Origin: Heteronotia binoei
Lineage: Eukaryota
Length of the DNA: 64,000 nucleotides
Assembly: GCF_032191835.1 (NCBI RefSeq)
Contig: NC_083239.1
Span: 35,340,001 to 35,404,000 of the forward strand
Direction of reading: 5' to 3'
The notes under the pieces were generated by a model. That model was not told where the DNA came from, did no database searches, and saw only the letters and a list, made by a program, of their open reading frames with translations. Below are positions 537 through 61,187 of the stretch, one piece after another. The first letter of the stretch is position 1, and the number at the start of each line of letters is the position of its first letter. The position numbers and the translations under genes were made by a program.

Positions 537-563
537 GGATTCTTTTACTTCAGATACTTTTTC
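537..563 (-). CDS. Candidate micro-exon of gene 1, EKVSEVKES (27 nt, phase 0)
   Basis: Minus strand tgcttttag|GAAAAAGTATCTGAAGTAAAAGAATCC|gtaagt; canonical splice sites, open frame, length 3n. Confidence 0.6.
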
Positions 564-914: not shown

Positions 915-2451
915 CTTGCAACAGAAAGATCAAGGATAAGTTTTAACGTAAAGGCTAATAATAATAATCTCTATGAAGCAAGGATGACTTAGTTTGTTAC
1001 TCAGACTGGTTTTGCACAAACCTTGCTCCATGGCAGGCTTCCCTTTTTCTCCGGAGCAAGCTTCGTGATTTCGCACAAGCTGCTCTGCGCCGCCATTTTT
1101 CATCATGGCAACCCACGATTTGGTGCACGGCAACATAAACCTGTTTTCTCAGGCATCCCAGCTCCACCAGACCAGTGGAAATCAGATTTTTTTTTCCCAT
1201 TTAAAATGATTTAGTGATGCCAGCCAAACGCAGACATCCAACATGACAGGAGATTTTTAAAGGAACCCAACAGCCGCTAAGTTGGCAGGTTGGGCACCTC
1301 AGCCCCACTAGACCAGTGAAAATCAGATGTTTCCATTTAAAGTGTTCATGAGGTAGATAGTCTTACTTCATGAGGTAGGTGTTGGGTAAGGAAGCCCACC
1401 CCCAAGTGGAAAGGTGACCATCCTGCCACCCAAGGACGCAACCTGCAGGCTGGATCACCAAGAGAGGAGGAGAAGGAATGGCGGGGATATGCATGGGGAC
1501 AACCCTGATGGCTGGATCCAGGTTCAAAGATGGGTAGCTCAGCAGGGGGATGTTGACCATAAGGAAGGACAGCTTGTCTGCCCTGGCTCAGTCCAGGGGG
1601 AGTGGTGGAAGTTGAGAATGTCTTATTGTTTTGCCCCTCACCTATTCATGATTGGTGTTACGTTTTGCTATATATCAGGTTGCCCATGCACATAACAAGC
1701 TGAATTGATAGTGCGTGCCAATAAAGGCCAACTTGAACTTGAGGTTGCCCATTCAAAAAATAACACATATCTCTATAACAGAGAGCAGAATACCTGTTTT
1801 GTATGGTGTGCACTATTAATAAAATATAATAGCACAGAAGCCGGCTATGGTTTTGTTTTTTGAGAAGGAGGCACAAACTGATAACAAGACTTTTTGGACA
1901 CTTTTATGCAGCAGGATAGAAATCTCCTCTTTGGAGGTAGGAAAGATTAATAGAATTCTGGAAGTACATTTGAAACTTTGGGAAATTACCTTGATATATA
2001 GACAATTTGTAATAGCTATAGAGGCTTTATCACAAACCAGTCCATCTCTAGTTTTCTGGATTAAAAAATAAGTTATTTCTTCATATTTCATGTGCTCTTG
2101 CATTTCTCATTCACTACAGTGTCTTGGTCAATGCCATCTATTTTACCACAGAGAAAACAGGAATCACATATACCTCCCTTTGTTTTGCAAGTGTAAATAC
2201 AAACATCAATTGAACTGTAATAACATTTGAAGAAATCTCCTAAGTATAGTAACAAGATTCATATCTCAATGCCACACTCAGAAAATAGACAAACATATTT
2301 AGTCAAGCAAAATGTCCTGAATCCAAAACATTAAGAGTTTATGGACCACCTAAAAACATTCATTCCTACATATGAAAGTGGGAGGGGAAGATAAATACCT
2401 CTGAATGAAAAATATCACATGCTACCCTTTAGAGCACAAGACAGATCTTAC

Positions 2452-2520
2452 CTCAAGTCCTTTGATTTCTAGACAAAGGAGAGAGAGGAGGAGAAGGACG
2501 GCCACAGCCTGGAGCTTCAT
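2452..2520 (-). CDS. Signal-peptide exon of secreted-protein gene 1: MKLQAVAVLLLLSLLCLEIKGLE
   Basis: aagATG start, hydrophobic core, I-K-G cleavage-like motif, phase-0 donor gag|gtaaga; paralog at 30197-30265 keeps frame, length and donor. Confidence 0.8.
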
Positions 2521-2591
2521 CTTGACTTGTCTTTGGGGTCTTTCAAGAATGAATTCACCGGTGTGAAGATAAGGGAGTTTTAGCAGCTATA

Positions 2592-2597
2592 TTTATA
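2592..2597 (-). promoter_or_regulatory. TATAAA box 72-77 nt upstream of the gene 1 ATG
   Basis: Same spacing conserved in the paralog (30337-30342). Confidence 0.55.
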
Positions 2598-3894
2598 TCA
2601 TGTCCCTGACCTTGAATTTCAGGCCTGGGTGGTAAAATACAATGCCTCCATAATGGAGGATGTCATCACTTTTGCCATCCATTAAAGGTTAACTCTCATC
2701 CTGTGCAGACAGTGTTGATTGATTCCAAAATCCAGATGCCAAGTTGATGCCAAAAAGTCAATGACATTGNNNNNNNNNNNNNNNNNNNNNNNNNNNNNNN
2801 NNNNNNNNNNNNNNNNNNNNNNNNNNNNNNNNNNNNNNNNNNNNNNNNNNNNNNNNNNNNNNNNNNNNNNNNNNNNNNNNNNNNNNNNNNNNNNNNNNNN
2901 NNNNNNNNNNNNNNNNNNNNNNNNNNNTGCATGTGCCAGAACAACAGAGAGGTAGAAATGACAATACCACTTCACATAACAGTTGGGGATATCAGAGGAG
3001 AACTGAAATGTTCTGAAAGGAAAATGGCTCAGGAAAATTGTCAGCAATACTGTGATATTTAATTAGTATGCTATATATGCCCCCACCTCACTTGGATTAG
3101 AAAACATAGTTCTTCTTTGACATGGTAGAATCATGAAACCTAAAGGCCCACCTGTATTTTGAAGTAATGTATATGTCTATTGCCGCATATTTCCTGGGTA
3201 AGAAGCAGAGATGTCCCAAATGAAAGTGAAAGGCAAAGGACATGTGTTTCTCTAGCATTTATATCTCTGCGCTCTTTACCATTGAAACGTTGCCCTAAAC
3301 CTCATGACATTCTGTCATTGGTGACAGCCCAGAAAGTAGTTGAAAATGTCCAAAGAAAAATGAAGAAGGGAAAGAAACTTAACCCCAAAACTGGAGTAAG
3401 AAACTTAAAAGGTTAATATGCAATTAAAGGGCCGAACAGTAAAACCAAAGTGTAAAAAAAATCATAAATCAACATACACGTATTTATTGTAGAAAGCTAA
3501 AACCATTTAAAGGCCCATCATAAGCCTCTATCCTATGTAAAATCATAAAACCTCAATGGGAACCCACTCAACTTGATCTGACGCATTTCAACCTAGATTG
3601 GTCTTCTTCAGAGGTCAGAAAGGTAAGTACACATATTGGCTCATAATACAGAACAGAATAAAACAATGGAACAATGCTGGACCACAAGGAAATTTAGTGA
3701 AGTGACAAAGGCTTAGAGATATTCTTGAGGCCTCTTGTTCTATAACCTTATGTCTTAATCAAGGGCATGCCTATAGCATTCAGTGTTTTGTTGTATGCCA
3801 CACAGTCCAGAATTGATCAAGTAAAGTCAGAGCCTATGTGCCAAGTATTATGAAAATGTCAACATGCACTTGACCACCAGATGATATTAAAGGT

Positions 3895-4148: not shown

Positions 4149-5877
4149 TCAAACTCTACATGTGAAGCGAGCTCCTGATCAGATGACCTCTGGTATTCAG
4201 GCGGCAAGTGACTGGTGCACATACCCACTCAACCCTTGAGGGGACCCCATCTTATTGAGAATGTGTGACTTTTTTGAGCTTGGGATATCCAGGCAACTGT
4301 GTAAGATGTTTTAAATTCAATAATTTTATGTTAGATTTTTTGTGTTGTGAGCCGCCCTGAGCCACTTCGGTGGGAAGGGCGGGATATAAATCGAAATAAA
4401 CTTGAAACTTGAAGCAGGCAGTGGGAGTGGCAATTATTATGAGGCCCCATCCTGGACTTTTGCCTTGGTACCCAGAATCATTAAGTCCACCCCTGTTGGT
4501 AAACATGGATACATGGACACGCAAAGATGTCTTATACTAAACCAAACCTTTGGCCTGTCAGTGTCAATATCTTCTCAGTTTAGAAGCAGCTTTTCAGAAT
4601 TCAGAAGTGGTTTGTGATTGCTTGCCTCTGCTTGATGACATTGGACTTCTTTAGTGATCTCACATCCAAATATTAACCAGGGCTGACTTTGCTAGCTTCT
4701 GATGAGATTCAACTATCCTGGACCATGAAGATCAGGGGATAACAACAGCAACATGATCCTTTTTTCTGAGTTAGCTAGCAGAGAGAGGACAATCTCCTAC
4801 ATTGAATAGCATAGCTTTTCCAAAACAGTAAATTCAACCTGAAAAAACTGAGGATCAGGGGATAACAACAGCAACATGATCCTTTCAACTGAAGATGCTA
4901 GGGATTGGATATGGGACTTCGTATATGGAAAGCAGATGTTCTACCACTGAGTTGTGGGCCCTCTACTTAGGACAATGGCACCTCCTCCACTTAAGGAGCT
5001 ACACGCCCCATTATTTTGTGTTATTTTTGAACCTCAATGCAGCAGAAAGCTTTCTTTTCCATCGGCATGAAATGTATCTTTTCTGCTTCCAGATTCAGGG
5101 GTGACGTCAATATGTGAACAGCCACATCTAGACTATGATTGCATTGACCTCAACTCATTAATGGAATCCTTTGTTCACAAGAAGAGAGCAGGTGCTGATG
5201 GAACAGCGCAGGGCAACACAGTTTTCCTAGTGTTTAAGGATGTTCTAATGTACCTCCTATTTTCATCACTTAAGAAATTATTTCCACTTGTCTTTTTCCC
5301 AAGGGAGGGGGGAAGCTCATGTTCCATTGAGTGGTTCACAGGAATATTAAAATGAGAGACACCAGTTAATTGAAACCAAATGGAGTTATGTAAGAGGGAA
5401 ATGGGCCAACATTTGTCTTAACCAGATTCCCAATAAGATGCTTGAGGGTGTTGGATTGTATAATAGTAGGTTTTCAACCAACGCAAAATGGTTTTGACCA
5501 CGTGTTTGCCGTGTGAACAGGAAAACAAGAAAGGGAATGAATGGCATGGAATAAATCAGCAAGATATTTTGATTGATAACAGTTGGAGGGGGCCACGATT
5601 CTATAGACCCTTTTCAATGTGTCAGACGAGGGGGCTTTAAGCCCGTCCCAGCTGGAAAGTACTGCATGTTTTAGCCAATCATTAATATGGAATGTCACCT
5701 TCTAGAAAGCATATTTCAGGAACTGCCTCACCTAAGTTTATCTGTTCTTCATTCTACCTGCTAATGATAAGTTCTGTTTTCTATCTGTCCTACTGCTTGC
5801 ATTTTTCTCCACTGCTAAAGAGAAGTGAAACATTTTGCATTTGGGAATAGGTGAGACCCTGAGATTTTATAACAGTA

Positions 5878-8600: not shown

Positions 8601-9141
8601 ATAGCGTGGAATCAGATAAGTCTCTAGCCTGGGGTGGGTGGTGTGGCGAGGTCTGTGCAAAGACAGCATAGTCAGTCTAAAGGCTAAATCATTAATGTAC
8701 AAATTAAACAAGGTAGAAGCCCCTTCTGGTTTCTATGGGAGCAGATAAACAGTATTAAAGACAACCAATAATAATAAAAAAAGTAACCTAACTGGTATAT
8801 AGGCCTTACATAGCTTCTCCCAGAGTCTATACGGAAGGACCATGTCAATTTTTTTTTTTTAAATTGTAATCGTTTGTCATTTGGATTCAAGGTACATTTC
8901 AAGAATGATAGAACTATTCAGTTAATCACTAAACTGACTACAAAATAATGTTATCATCCAAAAAAAATGTGTGAACTGAAAACTGTGAGCTAGCTCACAC
9001 TAACTCAGCTTAGAGGGAACATTGCTCCCATGTATATAAACTGAGTGGCCATTCTGTTCTTTCCCTGTTCCTTGCTTCCCATGCCTTCAGCTCATGATTA
9101 TGTGGACTTAAGCTGCCTTGATTAAAAAAAAAAATACTCAT

Positions 9142-9171
9142 GATTTCTGTTGGAGGTGCGGTAGTTTGTGT
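9142..9171 (-). pseudogene. Thr/Pro-rich micro-exon TQTTAPPTEI with mutated donor (atgagt)
   Basis: Acceptor catgtttttag intact; donor reads ATGAGT where paralogs have GTGAGT. Confidence 0.6.
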
Positions 9172-10190
9172 CTAAAAACATGCATGGATAATAAAAATAT
9201 ATGAAATGTTATGACCCTTCATCCGCCTCATGCTATTCTGTCAATAGCTCTCAGAGGCATGTGGGAATGATGAGGATACATTGGTGAACTGTGTACAACA
9301 GGATCTGAACGTGTGGATTGATTCCTAGACACCTCATGATCTCCATGTTTGCTAAATTGCCTCCATGGAGTTTTGCCCCAGACTAAGAAGATATCAGTGA
9401 ACAACTGCTGATATTGGTTCAGTTCAATACTATTTTGTTTGCTGGCAGGCCACCTTATTGGCATTGATTTTTGTATATTTCTCCCTGTACATCTGAAGGC
9501 TTTTAGGACACAACACATCAGCTCTTCCATGCTATCTCAGAGGGGATCCTCTTTTTCAAATCAAATGATTCACCTGTGCATTTTTCTACCAGTCACTTTT
9601 TGTGACCTTAAAACACACACAGTCCACAAAGCTCCACAGATAAATGAGAGGCCTCCCAAGTGATCTGTGTGAAAATCCCTGTGGAAGAGGCTGTCAAGTT
9701 GAAGGGTTAGGAGGCAGGTGACCTCTTTAACTAGTTTTCCTTTACTTAAGTGTCTGACTAGTTTGGCTTCTCGTGTTCCAGAGGCCATGCTGGTTCTGAT
9801 TGTGAGAGGGTTCCACTTGATCCTCTGATGCTTCCTTGGGCTGTAATGTCTGTATTAATCCCTCCCTTGCAATTATTTTGAACATAAGGATGTAAGAGTA
9901 GTATTAACCTGTATACTAAGAATAAAAAAATGTAATTTATGTACATCATGGCAACTTTGATGCCTTAACCAATGTCATTAAGAGTAAGGACTTCATTTTT
10001 TACCTGTCAAATTTCCCTCTCAACTGAGCCCCAGACCACTGTGTTCCTACAACCAAAGTAGGTTCTTAGTATACAACATGGTACTCTGTTCTGATTTTGT
10101 CCTTGTCCCTGTTCCTTGCTTCTTGTGCCTTCAGCTCATGCTTATGTGGACTTAAACTGACTTGATTTTTTTATTTTAAAAAATATTCAC

Positions 10191-10223
10191 TTTTTCAACA
10201 GTTGTAGGTGCAGCGGCTGTTTC
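10191..10223 (-). CDS. Thr/Ala-rich micro-exon ETAAAPTTVEK (33 nt, phase 0)
   Basis: gaatgtttttag|...|gtgaatattt; homologous position to the 27-nt exons at 55-61 kb. Confidence 0.65.
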
Positions 10224-12231
10224 CTAAAAACATTCATGAGTAATATAACTATATGAAATGTTCATTATGATCATTGTCAGTCTCATGGGATGCTGTCAGT
10301 AGCTGTCAGAGGCATGCAGGAATGCCAGGGATACTTTGGTGGACTGTGTTCAGTAGTGTCTGAATCTGCTAGGCTCTCTCCATGGAGTTTCTGTCCAGCC
10401 AATACAGATATGTGGAAATGGTTGGTGATCAACTGCTGATGCTGGGTCAATGCAATTTTGTTTGCTAACAGGCCATCTTCACTGCATTGAGTTTTGTGAA
10501 TTTCTTCCTACACATTTGGAGGATTTTAGGGCACAACACGACAGCTCTCCATACTATGTCAGAAGGGATCCTATTTTTCAAATCAAGAGATTCATCTGAT
10601 GTGTGTTTTTCTGCCAGTCATTTTTGTGTGAACTATATATATAAAAAAGAAAATATTCCACAGGTAAAAATGAGAAGCTCTCCTAGTGATCTGTGTGAAA
10701 ATCCCTGTGGAAGAGGTTGCCAAGCTGACAAAGTCTTCCTCCTCCTTCCTGCCCTTAGGAGGCAGGTGACCTCTTTCCTAGTTTACTTAAGTGTCCGACT
10801 AATATGGCTCATGCTGGTTCAGATGGTAAGAGTATATCATTTGATACTTTAGGAAGGATTGTGAGCAACTGAGGATGGTGTTTCAAATCGTGATGATTTT
10901 TTTGATTGCTAAAAGGCCAACTTCATTGCCTCAATTTATGTATATTTTCCTCTATAAATTTAGACACTTATAAGGCATGACACATCAGCTTTTCTATGTT
11001 ATGCCCAGGGCTCTTTTGTAGCAGGATCTCCTTTAATATTAAGCCACATGCCCCTGATGTAGCCAATCTTCCTAGAGCTTACAGCAGGCCCTGTAAGAAG
11101 AGCTCTTTAAGCTCTTAAAGGATTGGCTACATCAGGGGAGTGTGGCCTAATATGCAGAGGAGCTCCTGCTAGAAAAAGAACCCTGCTTCCAGGTCATGTA
11201 GGCACTTTGCTGAAATGTTGAACGTTCCTCCGTGCTCCCAGTAAGTGAGCCTCCTGTCAGCTGCTTGGAGGGAACTGACAACCCTAGAGGAGACCCCCCC
11301 CCTTTTCCAAAATAAGAGAATCTTTCAATGTGTTTTTTTTCCCCTGTCAGTCACTTAATTTGATATGAAGAGTTCAAAGTCCACTGATAAATGAGAGGCT
11401 GTCCAGCTGATCGTTGTCAGAACCCGGTAGACATGGCTGCTTGGAATCAACAGAACTTCTACCACTATCTGCCATTAGGATGTAGGTGACTCTTTAACTT
11501 GTTTTCTTTCACAAAAGCATTCGACTAATTTGGATGACCATGAGCCACCATGACCACGAGCCACCTTGTGCTTGCTGTATGTTCTTATGTTCTGTATGTT
11601 CTTATGTATGTGCTTGCTGTATGTTCTTGTGTTCTTATGTTATGCTTATGCTATCCTGAATGAAGGGAGAAGAAGCCATTGGTCTAATCATCTTTCATAT
11701 AGCACAGTATTACAATAAGGAGGACTAGATCTGTTCCTGATTCAAGGAGGGATAGCCATCCTCACCTCTGGTGATATTGCTCATGATCTTCTCAATGAAG
11801 GGGAAAGAGACCACTGACCAAATCAAGAAGTATATTCATGTCAATCAGTTGTAACCAAGTCTTTTCATCAAAGCACATATTACTAAAAGAGATCCAAAAG
11901 ACTTGTTGGGTGCAGTTTGTGCGAGGGTTGTGTGAGGGTTTTTTATTGTGTTCACTTAAGTTTGGAAAACAAAGAATGAAGGAAAAATTGAACTGGATGA
12001 CTGCCTGTGAAGAGCATCTTTTTAACCCTACTGCTAAGTGGCCTCAAGGGCTCCTGGGTAAAGATAAATGTGGCCAACGGTGCAACCTGCAAACACATTC
12101 ACTTCCACTTCCACAGAATTCACTGGCCCTTCTCTTTGTTAGAAATGCCAAATAATCAGAACACATAAGCTCTTCTGTGTTTTTTTGAGAGGGGATGCAA
12201 TTTTTCCATAAGGAGACCTTCTCAAGATTTT

Positions 12232-18819: not shown

Positions 18820-21226
18820 CATCCCTTATGAATATACAGTGCAGGTGAAGAATAGGTTTAAGGAACTAGAGTTGATAAGGCAGAGTGCCTGAAGTACTAT
18901 GGATGGAGGTTTGTGACATTATTCAGGAGGCAGCAATCAGCACCATCCCAAAGAAAAAGAAATGCAAGAAAACAAAGTGGCTATCTAATGAGGCTTTACA
19001 AATAGCTGAGGAAAGGAGGAAAGTGAAAGGCAAAGGTGAAAAGGAAAGATCCACCCAACTGAATGCAGATTTCCAGAGAACAGCAAGTAGAGATAAGGAG
19101 GCCTTCCTGAAGGAATAATGCAAAGCAATAGAGGAAAAGAATAGAATGGGAAGGACAAGAGATCTCTTCAAGAAAATTTGAGAAATCAAAATAACGTTTC
19201 ATGCAAAGATGGCCATGATAAGGGACAAAAATGGCAGGGAACTAACAAAAGCAGAAGAGGTTAGGAAGAGATGGCAAGAATACACAGAAGAATTATACAT
19301 GAAGGATCTCAATGTCCTTGACGACCATGACAGTGAAATCACTGACCTCAAGCCAGACATCCTGGAGTGCGAAGTCAAATGGGCCTTAGAAAGCATTACT
19401 AACAACAAAGCAAGTGCAGACGATGGTATCCCAGTTGAGCTATTCAAAATCCTAAAAGATGATGGTGTTAAAGTAATGCACTCATTATGTCAGCAAATTT
19501 GGAAAATGCAACAGTAGCCACAGGATTGGAAAAGGTCAGTTTATATTTCAATCCCAAAAAAGGGTAATGCCAAGGAATGTTCAAACTATTGCACCATTGC
19601 ACTCATTTTACACACCAGGAAGGTCATGTTAAAGATCCTACAAGCTAGGCTTCAGCAGTATGTGGATCGGGAACCACCAGAAGTACAAGCTGGGTTTTGG
19701 AGAGGTAGAGGAACAAGAGATCAAATTCCCAACATTCACTGGATTATGAAGAAACCACAGGAGTAACAGAAAAACATCTATTTCTGCTTCATTGACTATG
19801 TTAAAGCCTTTGATTGTGTGCATCACAACCAACTGTGGCAAGTTGGGATGGGAGTACCAGACCACCTCAGATGTCTTCTGAGAAACCTATATAAGTGACT
19901 GTCAGAACAGGATACGGAACAACTGATTGGTTTAGAATAGGAAAAGGAGTTTGACAGGGATGCATATTGTCACTCTGCTTATTTAATTTATATGCAGAGT
20001 ATATCATCTGGAATGCCAGCCTGGATAAAGCAGAAGCTGGAATTAAGGTTGCGGGGGAAACATCAACAATCTCAGATATGCAGATATTACCACTCTAATG
20101 GCAGAAAGTGAAGAGGACCTAAAGAACCTCTTGTTGAGGGTGAAAGAAGAGAACACAAAAGTAGGTTTGAAACTCAACATAGCAAAAACTAAGATCATGG
20201 TATCTGGTCCCATCACTGCTTGGCAAATAGAAGAGGAAGACAGACTTCATATTCCTGGGATCCAAGATCACTGCAGATGGTGACTGTAGCCATGAAACTA
20301 AAAGATGGTTGCTCCTTGGGAGGACAGTTATGGTGAACCTGGGCAGTATAATAAAAAGTAGAGACATCGCACTGCCAAGAAAAGTCCATATAGTCAAAGT
20401 GATGGTATTCCCAGTAGTAATGTATAACTGTAAGAGTTGGACCATAAGGAAGGCCGAGTGGAGAAGAATAGATGCTCTCATGTTATGGTGTTGGAGAAGA
20501 CTCTTGAGAGTCCCNNNNNNNNNNNNNNNNNNNNNNNNNNNNNNNNNNNNNNNNNNNNNNNNNNNNNNNNNNNNNNNNNNNNNNNNNNNNNNNNNNNNNN
20601 NNNNNNNNNNNNNNNNNNNNNNNNNNNNNNNNNNNNNNNNNNNNNNNNNNNNNNCCGCCCTCCACTCCAAAGAGTCTCAGAGCAGCTCACAATCTCCTTT
20701 ACCTTCCTCGCCCACAACAGACACCCTGTGAGGTGGGTGGGGCTCGAGAGGGCTCTCACAGCAGCTGCCCTTTCAAGGACAACCTCTGCCAGAGCTATGG
20801 CTGACCCAAGGCCATTCCAGCAGGTGCAAGTGGAGGAGTGGGGAATCAAACCCGGTTCTCCCAGATAAGAGTCCGCACACTTAACCACTACACCAAACTG
20901 GCTCTCAAATCAGATCAAATCAGTCAGTCCTAAGGGAAATCAACCCTGATTGTTCCCTTGAAGGTCAGATGCTGAAGCTGAAGCTCAAATACTTTGACCA
21001 CCAAATGAGAAGGGAGCACTCACCGGAGAAGACCCTGATGCTGGGAAAGACAGAAGGCAAAAGAAGAAGGGGACGGTAAAAGATGAGATGGCTGGACAGC
21101 ATTACTAATATAACCAACATGAATCTGAGTGGACTTTGGAGGATGCTGGAAGACAGGAGAGTCTGGCGTGACTTGCTCCATGGTGTTGCGAAGAGTCGGA
21201 CTCGACTGTGTGACTGAACAACAGCA
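18820..21226 (+). mobile_element. RTE-BovB LINE, 5'-truncated and degenerate, interrupted by an N gap and a SINE (20655-20905)
   Basis: MPEVLWMEVCDIIQEA..., RWQEYTEELY, KASADDGIPVELFKILKDD, MAESEEDLKNLL...; BovB 3' end ...gtgtgactgaacaac. Confidence 0.9.
20655..20905 (-). mobile_element. tRNA-derived SINE with L2-like tail; second copy near 27410-27693
   Basis: Minus strand reads agtttggtgtagtggttaagtgtgcggactcttatctgggagaaccgggtttgattcccca. Confidence 0.65.
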
Positions 21227-22305: not shown

Positions 22306-22801
22306 CTAAATTTAATGAGAGGGGAAAAATGCATTAGGATCTATTTCTCAAAACAGCATCCTTACCCTCAAGACATATTTAAGAATGCATTTGCACTTCT
22401 AACTCAATTGAGGTTTGAACATTTTCATAAAGAGTGTTAGTAAATATATTTGTTTTAGCCCCTCTAACATTATTTCCCAAGTCTCTATTGGGAGTAAAAA
22501 TAGTTCTTAAATTCATTTAAAGTCTCAGGTAAATTTCTTAAATTTCCCTGTGTTTCTGTAACACCACTATGCACCTCTCTTAGTTCCTCTTTACCTAATT
22601 TCTCCCTGGAATATAACAGTCTGAGTATTTTCTCCATGAGGAAGAACGGTGAGTAATAACATTTTTAAATAAATAAATAATAGTTCTGCCTTGGTTTTAC
22701 AACATGATCTAAGTCTCCTCTTTGGGGGTGGGATACATTCACAGAATTCTGGAAGTCCATTGGAAACTTGAGGATATTATCTTGATATGTAGATAATACG
22801 T

Positions 22802-29422: not shown

Positions 29423-30196
29423 GTAGGCATGCTGGCTCTGGCTTGGTTTTGTGAAGGAAACAGGCTATTAAAAAGCCTGCAGCCTGTTTTGGACACTTGC
29501 TTCCAGCAGGGTATAAATATATATATGAACATATGAAGCTGCCTTATACTGAATCAGACCCTTGGTCCATCAAAGTCAGTATTGTCTTCTCAGATTGGCA
29601 GCGACTCTCCAGGGTCTCAGGCTGAGGTTTTTCACACCTATTTGCCTGGACCCTTTTTGGGAGATGCCAGAGATTGAACCTGGGACCTTCTGCTTCCCAA
29701 GCAGATGCTCTACCACTGAGCCACCGTCCCTCCCAATCTCCTTGTTGGGGGCAGGAAGCCTTTATAGAATTCTGGAAATGCATTGGAAACTTGAGAGAGT
29801 TGCCTTGATATAGCGATAATGTGCAATATCTACAATGTACCTGTTAAAAAGGCTGAATTTCTGGATTTTAAAAAATTATCCCTTCATACTTCAATTCTTA
29901 TTCTTGTCAGACAGGGCAAATGCAAACCCTCTCCTCCCCCCCCCCTTTTTTTTAACAAATACAAACATACATTGAACTAGAGTTACTTTGAAGTGATCCC
30001 CTAAGGATGACAAAAGCATTATTATCTCAACACCATCTCCAGAGAATAGAACAAAAATGCCCAGTTATTTAGCTCAGGGTTCTTTCATAAGCAGCCTTTT
30101 GTGTCCATACCTGATATATGAAGATGAATATCTCTGAGGATAAATATTAATGAAACACATCATGTGCTACCCGTCAGAGTACAAGGCAGCCCTTAC

Positions 30197-30265
30197 CTCT
30201 TGTCCCTTGACCTCTAAACAAAGGACAGAGATGAGAAGAATGGCAGCTGCAGCCTGAAGTTTCAT
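30197..30265 (-). CDS. Signal-peptide exon of secreted-protein gene 2: MKLQAAAAILLISVLCLEVKGQE
   Basis: aagATG, hydrophobic core, V-K-G motif, donor gag|gtaagg; 69 nt like the paralog at 2452-2520. Confidence 0.8.
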
Positions 30266-30336
30266 CTTGGTTTCTCTTCGGTGTCTTTCAAGAATAAGCA
30301 AACCAGTGTGAAGAAAAGGGATGTTTAGCAGCTGTT

Positions 30337-30342
30337 TTTATA
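30337..30342 (-). promoter_or_regulatory. TATAAA box upstream of gene 2
   Basis: Same position relative to the ATG as in gene 1. Confidence 0.55.
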
Positions 30343-30420
30343 TCATGGAATGTCAAGCCTTGATGCTAAAATACAACACTTCCATGCTCTAGGGTCTATC
30401 AATTTTGCAATCAGGAAAGG

Positions 30421-31900
30421 TTAGCCCTCATCCTGTGCCAGGTAAATATTAATTGCAAAACCAAGAGGCCAGCTTGGTGCCAATGGCATGGCTTTTCCTG
30501 GGTTGAGTTTTGCAGGTCTGTTTCCACTGGCCTGTGCCAGAACAAAGTGACCCCAGGGCAATGGCCCCAAGGTTGTCTGCTGAGATGGAGCAGAATGTGA
30601 AGCTACCTGGGCATTTACAGCCAGGGAAAACTGCACAGACCCCCACAAATAAGACTGGCCCGGAGCCTGAACAGCCGCACCCTGTGAAGAACCAACCAAG
30701 CCAGGGTGTCCCCCCCATCATGCTCGGTCCCGCCATAAGACTAAGTGGTGGAGGTTGTCCCCAAAGGCTCCCATGGCCATTCCCCTACGTTTCGCTGTGT
30801 GGTGTGTTTACCTTCAGAGTTAGCCGCTGTGACCACTACTGCCACAGGTGCCGGGGCCGACAGCCACCCCAACGCTGCCCCAGAGCCTTGGCCGCCATCC
30901 TCCTCTTCAGAGCCTTGGTCCTCCTCGACCACCGGGATGTGGCTTGGGCCTTCACTCCCATCATCCTGGCCAGTCTGCCCTGCAAAGCAGACAAACAAGC
31001 CAGAACCTCCTTCTCAAAGGCCCAGGTGGATGTCCTGGCCGCCTTGTGGCTCCTGGCCTGCTGTGAAGGCCTCACCTCACAGCCCCCCTGCCTCTCCAAC
31101 TGGTTGATGATGGCCTTCCTTGTACGGACCTCCTTCTCTTCCCCCGGGGCATGGGGTAGAGGCCTCTTATTGGGGGGTCTCCAAAGTGGCTGCTTGCCTT
31201 TGGGCGGGCCCTGTCCCTTCTTTGAGCCCATCTTGCTCAAAACCAGTCTAAAACCCCCTTTCAGATAGCCCTCTCCCGGGCCTGATTTAAACTCCCACTG
31301 GGTCGTTAACCCCAAGGCGATAAAGGCCAACAGGCTGATGGCTGGAGCCTCGTGGGGCTCTGGATGAGCCGCGGAGCAGTGGAGAGAAAAGGGGGTGTTC
31401 ACCAGCTCCCTAGGGGGAGAAGCCTCCCGTGAAGGTCTCTGCTGCCGCGGCCCAACTCTGTCCCTCCGAGGCATCGCTCTAATGAGTGCCCACAAGCCGC
31501 TGCTTGGCCCAAGTGCCGCACCAAAAGCTCCTTCTTCACTGTGTCCTGAAGCTGCGCCACTCCAAGCCACCACTGCTGGGCCAGCCCTCCAACGCTGCCC
31601 GTTCTTGGCGTGAAGGGAGAGAGCACTCTGAATCTCTCCTTGGCAAGAATGGAGTGGGAACTGCGTGGTTGGGGGCGTGGCTGGGGTTAATAAAACCCCA
31701 GCACTCTGCCCCCCAACCAGTCCCCACATGGTTGGAAAGGCCTGTTAGCCTCCCATCCTTCCGGGGAGACAAACATGGCCTCCACCCTAAGCCGACGAAA
31801 CGTCGGCACGGTCGGGAGGGGCCACAATATGTGTGCCTGTTATTGTTTACAATTTTGTGGAGGTCTAAGATTTGGTGTTACTTTTATTTATATTTCTTGG
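30421..31900 (-). mobile_element. GC-rich retroelement-like fragment (possibly DIRS/Ngaro-type ORF1 region); GC-rich blocks of similar character near 58450-59100 and 63545-64000
   Basis: Abrupt GC shift and overlapping Pro/Arg/Ser-rich ORFs (MGSKKGQGPPKGKQPL...); family not recognised with certainty. Confidence 0.3.
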
Positions 31901-55166: not shown

Positions 55167-55193
55167 AACGGTTGTAGTTGCAGCAGTTGTTCC
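55167..55193 (-). CDS. Thr-rich micro-exon GTTAATTTV (27 nt, phase 0)
   Basis: ccatgtttttag|...|gtgagtatttc. Confidence 0.7.
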
Positions 55194-55815
55194 CTAAAAA
55201 CATGGATGAGTAATATAAATATATGAAATGTTCATTATGATCCTTCGTCAGTCTCATGTTATGCTGTCAGTGGCTGTAAGAGGTAAACAGGAATGCTAGG
55301 GATACAATGGAGGACTGCGTTCAGCAGGGCCTGAATCTGAGGATTGACTCATGGAAACTTGGTGCTCTCCAAGTTTGCTAGGCTCCGTCCATGGAATTTC
55401 TGCCCAGCCAATAAAGATATGTGGGAATGCTTGATGCTGGTTCAATGCAGTTTTGTTTGCTAACAGGCCATTTTCAATGCCTTGATTTTTGTGAATTTCT
55501 CCCTACACATTTGGAGACTTTTACGGCTCAACACTTCTGCTTTCCTTGCTATATCAGAGGAGACCCTCTTTTTCAAAGCAAGAGATTCACTGGATGTGTG
55601 TTTTTCTGCCAGTCACTTTTTGTGACCTACCAAAAATATAAATAAATCAAAGTTTTACTGCTAAATGAGAAGCTCTCCTAGTGATCTGTGTGAAAATTCT
55701 TGTGGAGGAGGCTTCCATGACTCTCTCCATGACTCTCTCCCTGTCCCTGCCTTCTTGCACCTTCCATTCATGCTTACGTGGGCTTAAATTGTCTTGATTA
55801 AAAAGAAATACTCAC

Positions 55816-55842
55816 AGCAGTTGTAGTTGCAGCAGTTGTTCC
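55816..55842 (-). CDS. Thr-rich micro-exon GTTAATTTA (27 nt, phase 0)
   Basis: ccatgtttttag|...|gtgagtatttc. Confidence 0.7.
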
Positions 55843-56803
55843 CTAAAAACATGGATGAGTAATATAAATATATGAAATGTTCATTGTGATCCTTCATCAG
55901 CCTCATGCTATGCTGTCAGTAGCTGTCAGTTGAATGAGGGAATGTCAGGGATACTTTAGTGGACTGTGTTCAGCAGGGTCAGAATCTGATAAGTGGTTCA
56001 TGTTAACCCAGTGCTCTCCACGTTTGTTAGGCTTCCTCCATGGAGTTTCTGCCCAGCCAATAAAGATGTGTAGGAATGGCTGGCAAGCGACTCCTGATGT
56101 TGGTTGAATGCAGTTTTGTTTGCTAACAGGCCATCTTCACTGCATTCATTTTTTTTGTGAATTTCTCCCTACACATTTGGAGACTTTTGGGGTACAACAC
56201 ATCATCTTCTCCATGCTATATCAGAGGTCCTCTTTTTCAGATCAAGAGATTCACTTTGTGCATGCTTTTCTGCCAGCCATTTTTTGTGAACTGTAAATAA
56301 ATCAAAATTGCTCTGATTAATGAGAGGCTGTCTCCCAAGTGGCCTTTAGGAGGCAGGTGACCTTCACTTAAGTGAATGACTAATCTGGCTTCTTATGATT
56401 CAGAACTCATGCTTGTTCTATTTGTGCGAAGGTTCCACTTGATCCTCTGATGCTTCCTTGGACATCTCCTCCCTCCTCACAATTGTTTCTATAAAAGGAG
56501 GTAGAAGCAGTAATAATCTATATGCTAAGAATGATAAATGATGACATAGAGATTATGTACATCATGGCAACTTCGATGTCTTAACCAACGTCATTCTCAT
56601 TAAGAGGCTGGACATCATTTTTCACCTGTCAACTATCCCCCTCAACTGAGCCCCAGACCATTGTGTTCCCATACCAACAGTAGGTTCTTAGTATTCAACA
56701 TGGTATTCTATTTGATCTGACTCTCTCTCTGTCTCTGCCTTCTTGTTTCTTCAACACATTCTTCTGTGGAGTTAAACTGCCTTGATTAAAAAGAAATACT
56801 CAC

Positions 56804-56830
56804 AACGGTTGTAGTTTCAGCAGTTGTTCC
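56804..56830 (-). CDS. Thr-rich micro-exon GTTAETTTV (27 nt, phase 0)
   Basis: ccatgtttttag|...|gtgagtatttc; the phase-1 reading contains TGA, favouring phase 0. Confidence 0.7.
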
Positions 56831-57344
56831 CTAAAAACATGGATGATTAATATAAATATATGAAATGTTCATTATGATCCTTTGTCAGTCTCATGCTATG
56901 CTGTCAGTGGCTGTAAGAGGTAAACAGGAATGCTTGGGATACAATGGAGGACTGCGTTCTGCAGGGCCTGCATCTGAGAATTGACTCATGGAAACTTGGT
57001 GCTCTCCAGGTTTGCTAGGCTCCCTCCATGGAATTTCTGCCCAGCCAATAAAGATATGTGGGAATGCTTGATGCTGGTTCAATGCAATTTTGTTTGCTAA
57101 CAGGCCATTTTCAATGCATTGATTTTTGTGAATTTCTCCCTACACATTTGGAGACTTTTAGGGCTCAACACTTCTGCTCTTCATGCTATATCAGAGGTCC
57201 TCTTTTTCAAAGCAAGAGATTAATCTGATGTGCGTTTTCCTGCAACTCGCTTTTTTGTGAACTAAAGAAAAAATGGTAAAGGAGAGGCCTCCCAAGTGAT
57301 CTCTATGAAAATCCTTGTCAAGTCAAGTCAGCCTTTATTGGCTT

Positions 57345-58215
57345 AAAAATAATGCTACAGATTAATATAGTCAGAAGCCTTGGAGTCCTACTGGAGCCTT
57401 CACTATCAATGGAGGCCCAGATAGCAGCTACTGCCAAGTTCACCTTTTTTCATCTGAGGCGGGCAAGGCAGTTGGCTCCCTTCCTAGAGCATCAGGATCT
57501 GGCAACAGTGATCCATGCAACGGTCACCTCGAGACTAGATTACTGTAATGCCCTCTACATGGGGCTGCCTCTGTGCCGAACCCGGAAGCTGCAGCTAGTG
57601 CAGAACGCGGCTGCCAGATTGTTGTTGGGGCTCCCAAAGTGGGAGCACATACAGCCGGGGCTGTGTGAACTGCACTGGCTGCCAGCTATATACCGGATTC
57701 GTTACAAAGTGCTGGTCATCACCTTTAAAGCCCTATATGGCCGAGGACCTGCCTACCTTAGGGACCGCCTCTTCCCGTATGAACCCCAGAGAGCACTGAA
57801 GTCAGCAGGGAAAAACCTGCTGACTATTCCCGGGCCAAAAGATGTAAAACTCCAGAGTACCCATACTTGGGCTTTCTCTGTAATGGCCCCACAGCTGTGG
57901 AATCAGCTTCCAGAAGAAATGCGGGCCCTGCGGGATTTTGAACAGTTCCGCAGGGCCTGCAAGACCGTTCTCTTTCGAATGGCTTTCACTGAGTAATTGC
58001 TAAGTAAATTCACCATCTGAATAGCACCAACATATCAACTTATTAACATTTACTTATTGTTTTTAGAATTTTAATAGTTTTTAATTACCTGTTGGTTTAT
58101 ATTGTCAGTTATAATTTAATGTATTTTAACCCAATGTATAACTAAATTGAATTTTGTTGTGAGCCGCCCTGAGCCTGCTCCGGCGGGGAGGGCGGGATAT
58201 AAATAAAATGTGTTG
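57345..58215 (+). mobile_element. L2 LINE 3' fragment
   Basis: VRSLGVLL...SRLDYCNALYMGLP...LWNQLP; gagccgccctgag tail. Confidence 0.85.
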
Positions 58216-59118
58216 TTGTTGTTGTAGTATAAAACAGGATAGAAACACAACTTTCATGTACACTTGTATAAACAAAAAATATTTCTGTGATATCCTTTGT
58301 TGTGACTTTAGAGCAGAGTACAGAAACTTGGCTGACCTCTCAGTAACATTGATTGAAAAATCTTTCAAGAGTCTATGGACCTTAAGTGCATCAAAGCAGT
58401 CCATCATACTGGCTAGAACGGTATAAATACATAAAACATAGAGTCATATACAGATGGCAGTGCAGGAGAACATGAGTAATCAGCCCCGTAGGCAGGATTT
58501 GAAGAATTGGGGGGGGGGGGCTTGATTTTTTTCAGGGGGCACATAGTGGCCCCAACCTCCATGGCCTTCTCTCCTACCACAGCTGAGGAGGAAAGCTGCC
58601 AGCTCACTGCCATACAGCCTCCCCACTCCCCACAGCTGCCCCAAGGTGATCCCTTTCTACCCCTCTTCCAGCAGCTCTGGTGGGGAGCCACTCAGAGATT
58701 TAGATACGTGCCACATGGTCTCCTGCCCTTACCTGTGGCATGATCCAGCTAGGCAAGCCCAGCGGGACAAGGGGAGTGGTGGAAGGCACCACCTTGTCAC
58801 AACTGACTTCTGGGGCTACAAGACCTCCAATTAGGATTTCTTCCTGTTGGAGGACGAGCTGAGGCTGCCCAAGCGCAGCTCCCACCCTCGCTTGGGTGGC
58901 CAGCAAGACCAGGCCAGAAAATCCCTGCAGGCGAACATCACCTCTCCACTGATCCCCAGCCCCGGACTGCAGCCAGAACCTCCACTTGTATGTGCCAGCC
59001 TACCCTACCCTGCCCTGTCTGCAACGGAGCCATTCGCCCCCTATCCCCGCCACCCCACTTGAGAGGCAGAATGGTCTCTTCTTGCAGGCACCCTCTAGCC
59101 CAACAACAGCCCAACGTG

Positions 59119-59611
59119 GAGCTTAACTTTCAGTCCTGGGCGTTGAAAGTGCCCCGTTGTTTCTGCTTGCTGAGGGGTCAGAGATTTCTTCCAGCCCCTA
59201 AGCAAGCAGAAGCAACTCCGAGCTTAACTTTAAGTCCTGGGCACTGAAAGTACTCCGTTGTTTCTGCTTGCTGAGGGGTCAGAGATTTCTTCCAGCCCCT
59301 AAGCAAGCAGAAGCAACATGGAGCCTAACTTTCAGTCCTGGACACTGAAAGTGCTCTGCTGTTTCTGCTTGCTGAGGGGTCAGATTTCTTCCAGCCCCTA
59401 AGCAAGCAGAAGCAACTCAGAGCTTAACTTTCAGTCCTGGGGGCTGAAAGTGCCCCATTGTTTCTGCTTGCTCAGAGATTTCTTCCAGCCCTTAAGCAAG
59501 CAGAAGCAACGAGGAGCTTAAGTTTCAGTCCTGGGCTCTGAAAGTACCCCGTTGTTTCTGCTTGCTGAAGGGTCAGAGAATTCTTCCGGCCCCTAAGCAA
59601 GTGGAAGCAAC
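59119..59611. repeat. Five tandem ~100-bp units, each containing a ~61-nt hairpin
   Basis: Unit starts at 59119, 59220, 59321, 59420 and 59514. Confidence 0.9.
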
Positions 59612-61160
59612 GGTGTATGATGACGGCAGAATGGAGAAGGATGCAGACGAGGCACTGGAGGCTGGTTAGGGGCCCCAAATCAAGGGGCCCTGCCTAGCAG
59701 TCAAAGGGCTGTTCCCCCACAGGCCCCCTCATAGCTACGGACCTGTGAGTAATTGACTCAACACATTTTTGTTTACAAGGGCAATACCTAGCTGAATAGG
59801 CTATTTTATTGAATCTGCTATCAAGAATAGCAGAGGGCATAGCATTGCATCTAGCGAGAGAAAACACTCCGCATTGTTGTGGCATCTGCAAGGAAGATAG
59901 GTAAGAAGCCATCTTTTCTGTGCTAAGAGGAATTTCAAAGCTCAAAGGGGCTTTCACTTAATTTTGTTAGTCAGACTATTTAACTCCTGGTGCTCAATGT
60001 CTAACAATCCCTGTGGAAGAGGCTGCCAAATTGCCAAAGTTCTCCTGCTACTTCCTGCCTTTAGGAGTCAGGTTACCTCTTTCCTTGTTTACTTAAGCAT
60101 CTGACTAATTTGGATCATGCTGGTTCTGACTTTAAGGGTGTATCATTTGATAATTTGGGGAGGATTGTGAGCAACTGCTGATGACTTCTTATTTTTTTTT
60201 AATTGTCTATAGGCCAACTATATTGTCTCAATTAATGTATATTTTCGGCTTTCAGTTTAGACACATAAGTCATGACACATCAGTTCTTTGATGTTATGCC
60301 TAGGGATGCCATATCCCCCAGTGGGAACAGGGCTCTCTTGCTGCCAAGCCCCACTACCACTGGCCAAGAGACTGACAGAGGAATTACTCCTCCCCCCAAA
60401 AAGAGACGAACACCAAAAACTGACTCCTGGGCAAAAACTCTATGATAGAAACTAATTCTACAATAGAGCTTTGGCCAAAGAAACAGAACATCCTCATCTC
60501 CCCAATATCCCTGATGTGCCTATATCACCCACGTCAAATAGGGACATTGTTGAAATGTTGGCATCCTTCCCTGCCCCCAGTAAGTGAGCCCCCTCTCAGC
60601 TGCTTGGTGGGACCTGGCAACACAGGAGGGGACCCCCTTTTCCAAAAGAAGAGACTCACCTATCGTGGGTTTATCTGTCAGTCACTTAATTTGACTTGAA
60701 GAGTTCAAGGTCCACTGATAAATAAGAGGATCTCCAGCTGATCATTGTCAGAACCCTGGTAGACATGGGTGCCCGAAAGCAACACAGCTCCTACCGCTAC
60801 CTGTCTTTAGGAGGCAGGTGACTCATAAACTCAATTTCCTTCACCTCAGCTTTGGACTAATTTGGATGAACATGAGCCACTTCTCATGCTTGCTGTAATT
60901 GTGATAGTGTTTCATTTGATAATTTGGTGCTTCATTGTGCTGGTTTGTCTGAATTAGTCTCCCCCCACAGAAAATGGTTTCTTTCTCTTGTCTGGCATAA
61001 TTTTCACCAGAAGGATATAGAATCAGCATTAAATTCAATACTAAGAAAAATAAATAATGTCTTTGATATAATGTATGCTAGACAATTTTTATTTATTGCT
61101 TAACCAATGTCCATGTCATTAGGAGTATAAATTTCATTTTTAAGATTGAGAAATACTCAC

Positions 61161-61187
61161 AGTTTTTGGTGTAGTAGCCTTTTCCAC
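61161..61187 (-). CDS. Micro-exon VEKATTPKT (27 nt, phase 0)
   Basis: tccatgtttttag|...|gtgagtatttc. Confidence 0.7.

What the first reader, a model, noticed from the sequence alone, without database searches (positions are those of the whole stretch)
2452..2600. Conserved signal-peptide exon plus TATA, duplicated 27.7 kb away
Seen: MKLQAVAVLLLLSLLCLEIKGLE (2452-2520) and MKLQAAAAILLISVLCLEVKGQE (30197-30265) are both 69 nt with a phase-0 donor and TATAAA 72-77 nt upstream. Substitutions are synonymous or conservative. Inference: cleavage after (I/V)KG leaves exactly two mature residues in this exon. A conserved ttcttgaaag 19-20 nt before the ATG could instead be a splice acceptor after a non-coding exon 1, the SCPP arrangement.
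Basis: partly seen in the sequence, partly recalled or inferred. Interest (0 to 1): 0.75.

Follow-up and report, generated by a model that had tools for sequence, protein, structure and literature searches.

The report
Duplicated gecko signal-peptide first exon
These are the promoters and first exons (short leader plus secretion signal) of two neighbouring copies of a barely annotated gecko gene family for secreted proteins built from tiny exons; this is a real but ordinary gene start in a family that is more interesting than the start itself.

Summary
There are two 69-nt ATG-to-GT exons, at 2520-2452 and 30265-30197. Each has TATAAA 77 nt before the ATG and ttcttgaaag ending 19 nt before it.

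- **Coding constraint:** they sit in a 370-bp paralogous block (73.6% identity). Between copies pN/pS is 0.29 (Fisher p 0.017), and 6 of 7 replacements are hydrophobic-for-hydrophobic.
- **Relative in another gecko:** a profile search of 1.84 billion proteins found one relative, XP_048357619.1 of Sphaerodactylus townsendi, misnamed "translation initiation factor IF-2-like". Its NCBI model uses the same 69-nt exon and donor. The rest of that gene is 15-33-nt phase-0 micro-exons spread over 39.6 kb.
- **Downstream exons here:** the window carries matching Thr-rich micro-exons on the same strand.
- **Promoter versus intron:** against S. townsendi, the 172 nt upstream of the TATA are 77% identical and the coding part 83%, but the first 150 nt of the intron only 40%. 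TATAAA and an initiator-like TCACACY 28-33 nt after it are conserved in all three sequences.

I read this as a TATA-driven first exon: about 44 nt of leader, a 21-residue signal peptide and two mature residues (confidence 0.7). An SCPP-type exon 2 behind an unseen non-coding exon is not excluded (0.2). No RNA run was listed, so the start site is untested. The scan had already noted the surrounding micro-exon cluster on this same window.

The parts
2452..2520 (-). Copy 1, coding part of the first exon: MKLQAVAVLLLLSLLCLEIKG|LE, 69 nt, ends in phase 0
   Evidence: Homologous to the annotated exon 1 of XP_048357619.1 (57/69 nt identical).
2446..2451 (-). Copy 1 splice donor, GAG|gtaaga
   Evidence: The donor sits at the same position in copy 2 (gtaagg) and in S. 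townsendi (gtaagt).
2521..2564 (-). Copy 1 inferred 5' untranslated leader (about 44 nt, no upstream ATG). It contains the invariant ATTCTTGAAAG (ttcttgaaag at 2549-2540).
   Evidence: Inferred from the TATA and initiator positions. The start site was not measured.
2560..2566 (-). Initiator-like TCACACC (fits YYANWYY). Its A at 2564 lies 33 nt after the first T of the TATA box.
   Evidence: Conserved as TCACACT in copy 2 and TCACACC in S. townsendi, where it lies 28 nt after the TATA.
2592..2597 (-). TATAAA box of copy 1
   Evidence: Invariant in all three aligned sequences.
2598..2769 (-). Proximal promoter of copy 1, ending at the N run 2770-2927. It includes TCAAGGTCA at 2615-2607 (an extended nuclear-receptor half-site) a few bases before the TATA region.
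   Evidence: 77% identical to S. townsendi over 172 columns, against 40% for the intron. The motif reading is from the sequence only.
30197..30265 (-). Copy 2, coding part of the first exon: MKLQAAAAILLISVLCLEVKG|QE, 69 nt, donor gtaagg
   Evidence: 58/69 nt identical to S. townsendi exon 1.
30266..30483 (-). Copy 2 leader and promoter: ttcttgaaag 30294-30285, TCACACT 30311-30305, TATAAA 30342-30337. An 11-nt deletion removes the TCAAGGTCA element.
   Evidence: Less conserved against S. townsendi (59-68%).
537..563 (-). 27-nt phase-0 micro-exon (EKVSEVKES; ttttag|...|gtaagt) 1.9 kb downstream of copy 1's exon. It is the only clear downstream exon of that gene inside the window.
   Evidence: Its cassette is homologous to the 27-30-nt micro-exon cassettes of the S. 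townsendi gene (window 593-350 versus L001 31968-32215).
9142..10223 (-). Thr-rich micro-exon cassettes lying downstream of copy 2's exon: 10223-10191 ETAAAPTTVEK, and one starting at 9171 whose donor is ATGAGT (broken).
   Evidence: Assigning them to copy 2's gene is an inference from order and strand.
55167..61187 (-). Thr-rich 27-nt micro-exons of a third paralog whose first exon is not in the window: 61187-61161, 56830-56804, 55842-55816 and 55193-55167 (GTTAATTTV type).

Best explanation
Each site is the core promoter plus first exon of one member of a tandem family of secreted-protein genes in a gecko genome.

RNA polymerase II is positioned by the TATAAA box and starts about 28-33 nt downstream, in the conserved TCACACY motif. 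This gives a leader of about 44 nt with no upstream ATG and an A at -3 of the start codon.

The exon then encodes a 21-residue signal peptide: Lys2, a 13-residue hydrophobic core, and E-(I/V)-K-G. The peptide takes the protein into the endoplasmic reticulum and is cut after Gly21. Two mature residues follow, and a strong phase-0 donor ends the exon.

Every downstream exon mapped in the family is a phase-0 micro-exon of 15-33 nt. This one constant exon can therefore be joined to any number of duplicated or lost cassettes without breaking the reading frame. The mature protein can drift (Thr-rich here, Pro/Gln-rich in Sphaerodactylus) while promoter and signal stay fixed.

Shown here: the exon, donor, TATA and motifs; their conservation in two paralogs and a second genus; purifying selection; and the micro-exon body of the homologous gene. 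Inferred: the start site, the cleavage site, expression, and which downstream exons each copy uses.
For: - **Exon and donor** are read directly from the sequence.
- **Paralogous block** of 370 bp, with only two copies in the window.
- **Selection:** pN/pS is 0.29 between copies (8.5 synonymous versus 7.5 non-synonymous changes on 17.2 versus 51.8 sites, Fisher p 0.017). It is 0.54 and 0.37 against S. townsendi.
- **Only relative:** a profile search of 1.84 billion representatives gave one true hit, P0001 = XP_048357619.1. It aligns at residues 1-22 of both query and protein, E 2.6e-7.
- **Same exon in the NCBI model:** in its locus the coding range starts at the same ATG, and exon 1 is the same 69 nt followed by gtaagt.
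- **Conserved motifs:** TATAAA, TCACACY, ATTCTTGAAAG and CAAGATGAA are invariant in the three-way alignment.
- **Promoter-like conservation:** copy 1 against S. townsendi is 77% identical in the 172 nt upstream of TATA, 74% from TATA to ATG, 83% in the coding part, and 40% in the first 150 nt of the intron. Homology resumes beyond the N run (3057-2929 versus L001 9565-9695, 71%). An intron end would not be expected to stay conserved this far upstream when the other intron flank is not.
- **No upstream exon seen:** there is no TATA-plus-donor pair at matching positions upstream of both copies. The one extra conserved 77-nt patch is a dispersed repeat.
- **Signal-peptide shape**.
- **Micro-exon body** of the family.
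Against: - There is no transcript evidence.
- The coding range held for the S. townsendi model starts at the ATG and ends at the stop. It therefore says nothing about its 5' UTR.
- The conserved TCACAC / pyrimidine-rich stretch / AAG can also be read as branch point, polypyrimidine tract (8 of 10 pyrimidines at -14 to -5) and acceptor.
- An AAG acceptor is used by the same S. townsendi model at its last exon (caaaag|AATTAA), so A at -3 is not disqualifying in this family.
- TATA-to-initiator spacing differs by 5 nt between the two species (33 versus 28 nt).
- Between the two paralogs, the exon is no better conserved than its immediate flanks.
- No protein of the window's own genome with this N-terminus is in the protein collections. 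Copy 2's presumed gene shows signs of decay: a micro-exon with a dead donor, and no counterpart found by blastn of the family's 3' terminal exons.
Confidence: 0.7

Rival explanations
1. SCPP-type arrangement. The 69-nt coding stretch belongs to exon 2, which starts right after ...ttcttgaaag (19 nt of leader). A short non-coding exon 1 with its own promoter lies upstream, and the TATAAA is an intronic bystander.
For: - The AG is conserved in all three sequences, with 8 of 10 pyrimidines at -14 to -5 and a branch-point-like CTCAC/TTCAC 24-28 nt upstream.
- The 19-nt leader piece resembles the 15 nt at the start of exon 2 in AMTN. [quoted passage not shown]
- The rest of the gene looks SCPP-like: phase-0 micro-exons, two mature residues in the signal exon, and a last exon with one codon plus the stop.
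- An 850-bp conserved non-coding block sits 2.5-6.8 kb upstream of each copy in both species.
Against: - TATAAA and an initiator-like motif at the right spacing are conserved in two paralogs and a second genus.
- The 172 nt upstream of the TATA are 77% identical across genera, while the true intron on the other side falls to 40%.
- A at -3 is an uncommon acceptor base (general knowledge of vertebrate splice sites).
- The upstream conserved block has no conserved TATA or usable donor, and carries indels that rule out coding.
- No matching TATA-plus-donor pair lies upstream of both copies.
Confidence: 0.2
2. One or both copies are silent relics: first exons of decaying paralogs that still look intact. 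The conservation reflects recent common descent rather than present use.
For: - No RNA run was listed.
- No protein with this N-terminus from the window's own genome is in the collections.
- Copy 2 has lost 11 nt of promoter, including TCAAGGTCA, and its promoter is only 59% identical to S. townsendi.
- A downstream cassette has donor ATGAGT.
- No homologue of the family's 3' terminal exons was found between 9 kb and 5.8 kb.
- The third paralog has an in-frame TAA in the exon that matches AEQQQIHAEPE.
Against: - ATG, Kozak -3 A, the hydrophobic core, the cleavage motif and strong donors are intact in both copies.
- pN/pS is below 1 in all three comparisons, and significantly so between the two copies.
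- Copy 1's promoter is 77% identical to that of a different gecko genus.
- A blank run search is not evidence of silence, as the tool itself states.
Confidence: 0.1

Closest known systems
XP_048357619.1 of Sphaerodactylus townsendi (RefSeq model named 'translation initiation factor IF-2-like'; UniProt fragment A0ACB8FRJ5)
   Same: - Same 69-nt first coding exon (17-18 of 23 residues identical) and same donor position.
- Same TATAAA, TCACACC and ttcttgaaag plus 19 nt before the ATG.
- Same cassette type of phase-0 micro-exons downstream, and the same flanking conserved non-coding block.
   Different: - It comes from a different gecko genus.
- Its mature part is Pro/Gln-rich (GQLPAAPQP cassettes), while the window's cassettes are Thr-rich (GTTAATTTV).
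- Exons 2-3 of the model (L001 11001-11102 and 11300-11446) gave no blastn match in the window.
- The name is an artefact of low-complexity similarity (no Pfam domain on record).
SCPP genes of the Pro/Gln-rich class (AMTN, ODAM, SCPPPQ1, caseins, salivary MUC7/PROL genes)
   Same: - A secreted protein whose signal-peptide exon ends in phase 0 two residues after the cleavage site.
- A string of short phase-0 exons that duplicate as exon-plus-intron cassettes.
- A last exon with almost no coding sequence, tandem paralogs, and fast-changing mature parts.
   Different: - Here the signal exon most likely is the first exon, behind its own TATA box. SCPP genes have a non-coding exon 1 (PMC4373244).
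- The signal peptide is 21 residues rather than 16.
- No Ser-x-Glu motif occurs anywhere in the S. townsendi protein.
- No sequence similarity to any SCPP was detected.
- Linkage to SPARCL1 or the enamel genes could not be examined.
Secretory gene families with a constant signal exon and a variable mature part (frog skin peptide precursors, cone-snail toxins, rodent seminal-vesicle REST genes); comparison from general knowledge
   Same: Promoter, leader and signal-peptide exon are held constant among paralogs and across genera, while the mature protein changes composition.
   Different: Those families put the mature peptide in one or two larger exons. Here the variable part is an array of 15-33-nt micro-exons. 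No homology is implied.

Membership tests
SCPP gene family | Signal peptide encoded by exon 2, behind a non-coding exon 1 (PMC4373244) | tested here: inconclusive
   A conserved TATA plus initiator-like motif, and 77% cross-genus identity upstream, argue that this is exon 1. A conserved AAG 19 nt before the ATG keeps the exon-2 reading open. No RNA data were available.
SCPP gene family | Signal-peptide exon ends in phase 0, shortly (two residues) after the cleavage site | tested here: met
   The exon has 69 nt (23 codons) and then GT. The predicted cut after Gly21 leaves LE, QE or QW. The cleavage site is inferred from the -3/-1 rule, not from SignalP.
SCPP gene family | All coding exon junctions in phase 0; short exons that duplicate as cassettes | tested here: met
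   In L001, every exon mapped by exact or near-exact match (about 18) is 15, 18, 27, 30, 33, 102 or 147 nt with AG/GT flanks; residues about 128-154 were not placed. The window's cassettes are 27-33 nt.
SCPP gene family | Ser-x-Glu phosphorylation motif encoded by the exon after the signal exon | tested here: not met
   No S-x-E occurs anywhere in P0001 (read). The exon that follows the signal exon in the window's genes could not be fixed.
SCPP gene family | Location in the SCPP cluster next to SPARCL1 and the enamel or bone SCPP genes | not testable with these tools
   The window and L001 (10 kb each side) hold only this family. Earlier notes of the scan mention no SCPP neighbour.
Family of XP_048357619.1 (unnamed gecko micro-exon secreted proteins) | Homologous promoter and 69-nt signal exon | tested here: met
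   E 2.6e-7 at residues 1-22. 79.8% nucleotide identity over 312 nt for copy 1, and 67-70% for copy 2. Three-way alignment.
Family of XP_048357619.1 (unnamed gecko micro-exon secreted proteins) | Downstream body of homologous micro-exon cassettes on the same strand | tested here: met
   Window 593-350 matches L001 31968-32215 and 44139-44341. Window 2257-2052 matches the KIPID-type cassettes at L001 13893-17250. Exons are shown.

The most novel reading that the evidence does not exclude
Geckos carry an unrecognised, lineage-restricted family of secreted proteins. It is either an offshoot of the SCPP family that moved its start site onto the signal-peptide exon, or an independent reinvention of the same design. 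A fixed promoter-plus-signal exon is spliced to freely duplicating phase-0 micro-exon cassettes. This lets the mature protein switch from Pro/Gln-rich (Sphaerodactylus) to mucin-like Thr-rich (this genome) within one gene family.
Probability: 0.4. Interest if true: 0.55.

Novelty: new member of a known kind. Interest (0 to 1): 0.38.

Why it matters
The exon-plus-TATA pair is an ordinary gene start. It is useful mainly as a handle on the family around it.

It anchors the 5' ends of genes that gene finders miss, because their bodies are 15-33-nt exons. In the collections searched, the only annotated relative found is a single RefSeq model with a misleading name.

With the 5' ends fixed, three things become testable:
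- how many genes the cluster holds;
- which tissue secretes these Thr-rich or Pro/Gln-rich proteins;
- whether the casein/SCPP-like design arose here by descent or by convergence.

The promoter also offers concrete regulatory motifs to test: the TATA box, an initiator-like motif, a TCAAGGTCA half-site present in copy 1 and Sphaerodactylus but deleted in copy 2, and an invariant ATTCTTGAAAG in the leader.

Tried and rejected
- **Plus-strand reading** of the given coordinates: contains a stop codon, rejected.
- **RNA evidence:** the single run search on 2380-2760 listed no run, so read laying could not be used at all.
- **Word-index protein search** with the 54-aa stop-to-stop frame through exon 1: no candidate. 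Pfam on both frames: nothing.
- **Word searches with P0001**, whole and restricted to residues 1-40: only itself and a fragment of the same gene.
- **P0002**, the second hit of the big search: a repeat protein from a 1.2-kb metagenome contig. It matches only the part of my query read through into the intron, so it is discarded.
- **Candidate exon 2 at 1921-2018 / 29735-29832 / 22695-22797:** no shared reading frame; it is conserved intron or repeat.
- **Conserved blocks at 5275-4976 and 5579-5331** as a terminal coding exon or as a non-coding exon 1. An apparent frame (ENCVALRCS...*) breaks in S. townsendi through indels, and there is no conserved TATA or donor. I treat them as conserved non-coding sequence.
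- **The 77-nt patch at 32019-31944** as an upstream exon: it is a dispersed repeat.
- **A phase-0-only spliced mapping** of the whole S. townsendi protein failed for residues about 128-154. tblastn placed the remaining exons.
- **Synteny with SCPP neighbours** through the scan's notes: no such notes exist.

Full report
**1. Observation.**
Read on the plus strand, the stated coordinates give frames with stops.
- Window 2520-2452 encodes MKLQAVAVLLLLSLLCLEIKGLE, followed by gtaaga.
- Window 30265-30197 encodes MKLQAAAAILLISVLCLEVKGQE, followed by gtaagg.
- Both coding stretches are 69 nt, so the donor is phase 0.
- TATAAA is at 2597-2592 and 30342-30337, which is 77 to 72 nt before the A of the ATG.
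- ttcttgaaag is at 2549-2540 and 30294-30285, with 19 nt between it and the ATG in both copies.
- The start codon has A at -3, and there is no ATG between the TATA box and the start codon.

**2. Extent of the duplication.**
A self-comparison of the window aligns 2387-2753 with 30136-30483 (73.6% over 368 nt). Weaker patches continue about 530 nt into the intron (2195-2296 with 29957-30058; 1921-2018 with 29735-29832). A profile built from the two copies, and later from three sequences, finds no further copy in the window.

Identity by segment between the paralogs:

| Segment | Identity |
|---|---|
| 145 nt upstream of TATA | 65.5% |
| TATA to ATG (no gaps) | 80% |
| Coding part | 76.8% |
| First 65 nt of intron | 69% with gaps, 81.5% without |

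So between the paralogs the exon is not the best-conserved piece.

Within the exon, however, change is concentrated at synonymous sites. There are 8.5 synonymous changes on 17.2 sites and 7.5 non-synonymous changes on 51.8 sites (pS 0.50, pN 0.145, Jukes-Cantor ratio 0.20, Fisher p 0.017). Six of the seven replacements keep a hydrophobic residue.

**3. What the peptide looks like.**
All copies have Lys2, a 13-residue hydrophobic core (residues 5-17, mean Kyte-Doolittle 2.9-3.2), and then E-(I/V)-K-G with I/V at -3 and Gly at -1. This is the textbook n/h/c layout of a cleaved signal peptide, and the core is too short for a membrane anchor. The cleavage after Gly21 is an inference from the -3/-1 rule, because SignalP was not available.

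**4. A relative elsewhere.**
- The word-index search with the 54-residue open frame through exon 1 found nothing, and Pfam found nothing.
- I then ran a profile of the two 32-residue open frames (alignment A1) against 1.84 billion cluster representatives.
- It gave two hits. P0002 matches only the intron read-through part of the query and comes from a 1.2-kb metagenome contig, so it is noise.
- P0001 aligns residues 1-22 to query positions 1-22 with E 2.6e-7. It is XP_048357619.1 of the gecko Sphaerodactylus townsendi, 249 residues, named "translation initiation factor IF-2-like". It has no Pfam domain on record.
- Its N-terminus is MKFQAVAVILLISLLCLEVKGQW.
- Word searches with P0001, whole and restricted to residues 1-40, found only itself and a fragment of the same gene.

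**5. The homologous locus (L001).**
The coding range held for the gene starts at the ATG (L001:10001) and ends at the stop (49656). It therefore carries no UTR information.

The first exon is the same:
- Exon 1 is 10001-10069, 69 nt, followed by gtaagt.
- It is preceded by TATAAA at 9929-9934, TCACACC with its A at 9957, and ttcttgaaag at 9972-9981 followed by 19 nt.

The rest of the protein maps to phase-0 exons spread over 39.6 kb:
- 15 and 18 nt: KFPID, KIPID twice, EISKIP.
- 27-33 nt: GELPAPPQP, GQLPAAPQP three times, GQFPAQQPF, LKNFGGSKF, GKKLRDGSKF, GKKFCRCPES, KPVTEAPAP, AEQQQIHAEPE.
- A last exon carrying one codon plus the stop, then the 3' UTR with AATAAA.
- Exons 2-3 of that model (102 and 147 nt) gave no blastn match in the window and do not look like the rest of the protein. 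They may be a modelling artefact.

**6. The same body in the window.**
On the minus strand the window has 27-33-nt exons with conserved flanks (...catgtttttag | exon | gtgagtat):
- 61187-61161 VEKATTPKT;
- 56830-56804, 55842-55816 and 55193-55167, of type GTTAATTTV;
- 10223-10191 ETAAAPTTVEK;
- one starting at 9171 whose donor has become ATGAGT;
- 563-537 EKVSEVKES, 1.9 kb downstream of copy 1's exon.

Their cassettes align with the S. townsendi cassettes. Window 593-350 matches L001 31968-32215 and 44139-44341. Window 2257-2052 matches the KIPID-type cassettes.

The window therefore holds parts of three tandem paralogs on the minus strand:
- one whose first exon lies beyond 64000, with its body at 63.5-53.5 kb and its 3' end near 49.7-47.9 kb;
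- copy 2 (first exon at 30.2 kb, cassettes at 13.5-9 kb);
- copy 1 (first exon at 2.5 kb, with its body running off the window).

Which cassettes each first exon is actually joined to is an inference from order and strand.

**7. First exon or second exon?**

For a TATA-driven first exon:
- TATAAA is invariant in both paralogs and in S. townsendi. A motif fitting the initiator consensus YYANWYY (TCACACC/T) lies 33, 33 and 28 nt after its first T.
- Across genera, copy 1 is 77% identical in the 172 nt upstream of the TATA box, 74% from TATA to ATG and 83% in the coding part. It is only 40% identical in the first 150 nt of the intron. Homology resumes on the far side of the N run (3057-2929 with L001 9565-9695). 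If the upstream side were an intron, it should decay as the downstream intron does.
- Nothing upstream looks like a non-coding exon. A conserved block 2.5-6.8 kb upstream (window 5829-4976 and 34616-33199; L001 54738-55407 and 2315-3188) has no conserved TATA or usable donor. The only other conserved patch is a dispersed repeat.

For an SCPP-type exon 2:
- The AG of ...gaaag is conserved, with 8 of 10 pyrimidines before it and a branch-point-like TTCAC/CTCAC 24-28 nt upstream.
- The 19-nt leader piece is like the 15 nt reported for AMTN exon 2 (PMC4373244).
- The same S. townsendi model uses an AAG acceptor at its last exon.

I put the first-exon reading at 0.7, the exon-2 reading at 0.2, and silent relics at 0.1.

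**8. Mechanism.**
The TATA box sets a start about 44 nt before the ATG. The exon supplies a cleavable signal peptide and two mature residues, and it ends in phase 0. Because all mapped downstream exons are phase 0, cassettes can be gained or lost without breaking the frame.

This fits the contrast between a constant first exon (17-18 of 23 residues shared across genera) and mature parts of different composition: Thr-rich here, Pro/Gln-rich in Sphaerodactylus. The first part of this paragraph is inferred from motifs. The second part follows from the exon lengths measured.

**9. Comparison with known families.**
The design is that of SCPP genes: a signal exon ending two residues after the cut, phase-0 short exons, a nearly empty last exon, and tandem paralogs.

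Membership is not shown:
- the exon-1/exon-2 criterion is probably not met;
- there is no Ser-x-Glu motif in the S. townsendi protein;
- no sequence similarity to any SCPP was found;
- linkage to SPARCL1 or the enamel genes could not be examined.

I file it as a member of the unnamed family of XP_048357619.1, which works like an SCPP gene.

**10. Organism.**
Earlier notes of this scan call the genome a gecko and name Heteronotia binoei. I did not verify the species. The best outside match is a gecko locus at about 80% identity in the conserved parts, which fits a different gecko genus.

**11. Verdict.**
As a feature it is an ordinary gene 5' end, and the two copies are simply tandem paralogs. 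The added value is that it anchors an almost unannotated micro-exon gene family.

Noticed in passing
window 4976-5829 and 33199-34616 (minus strand); L001 54738-55407 and 2315-3188: An 850-bp conserved non-coding block sits 2.5-6.8 kb upstream of each first exon, in both paralogs and in S. townsendi. It has an invariant core TTGTGAACAAAGGAT (which contains a SOX/TCF-type AACAAAG) and further blocks such as TGGTTAAGACAAATGTTGG. Indels rule out coding, and there is no TATA or donor. It is possibly an enhancer shared by the family.
   Followed up: partly
window 2607-2615 (minus strand); L001 9910-9918: TCAAGGTCA, the extended half-site bound by NR5A/ERR-type nuclear receptors, lies a few bases before the TATA region in copy 1 and in S. 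townsendi. It is removed by an 11-nt deletion in copy 2.
   Followed up: no
L001 10001-49656 (XP_048357619.1): The RefSeq name 'translation initiation factor IF-2-like' is a low-complexity artefact. The protein is a secreted Pro/Gln-rich micro-exon product. Exons 2-3 of the model (11001-11102, 11300-11446) gave no blastn match in the window and look unlike the rest of the protein.
   Followed up: partly
window 49633-49665 (minus strand): In the third paralog, the exon homologous to S. townsendi AEQQQIHAEPE reads AGGQ followed by an in-frame TAA. Either the protein ends one exon earlier here and the last exon is wholly untranslated, as in caseins, or this copy is damaged.
   Followed up: partly
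window 8873-9171: After its last Thr-rich cassette (donor mutated to ATGAGT at about 9141), copy 2's presumed gene runs straight into sequence that in S. townsendi lies 5 kb beyond the gene's stop codon. No homologue of the family's 3' terminal exons was found by blastn, so copy 2 may be truncated.
   Followed up: partly
window 43512-47740: There are 100%-identical direct repeats (43933-44313 = 47254-47634; 43512-43617 = 47635-47740), consistent with a very young LTR-element insertion just downstream of the third paralog's 3' end.
   Followed up: no
window 18885-20900, 24087-24970, 57352-57996: BovB-like and CR1/L2-like retroelement fragments, one with a weak RVT_1 match (E 4.8e-05, below Pfam's cut-off), fill the long intron after copy 2's first exon and interrupt the cassette array of the third paralog.
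   Followed up: partly
window 2770-2927: An N run begins only 172 nt upstream of copy 1's TATA box. Homology to S. townsendi continues on both sides of it.
   Followed up: no
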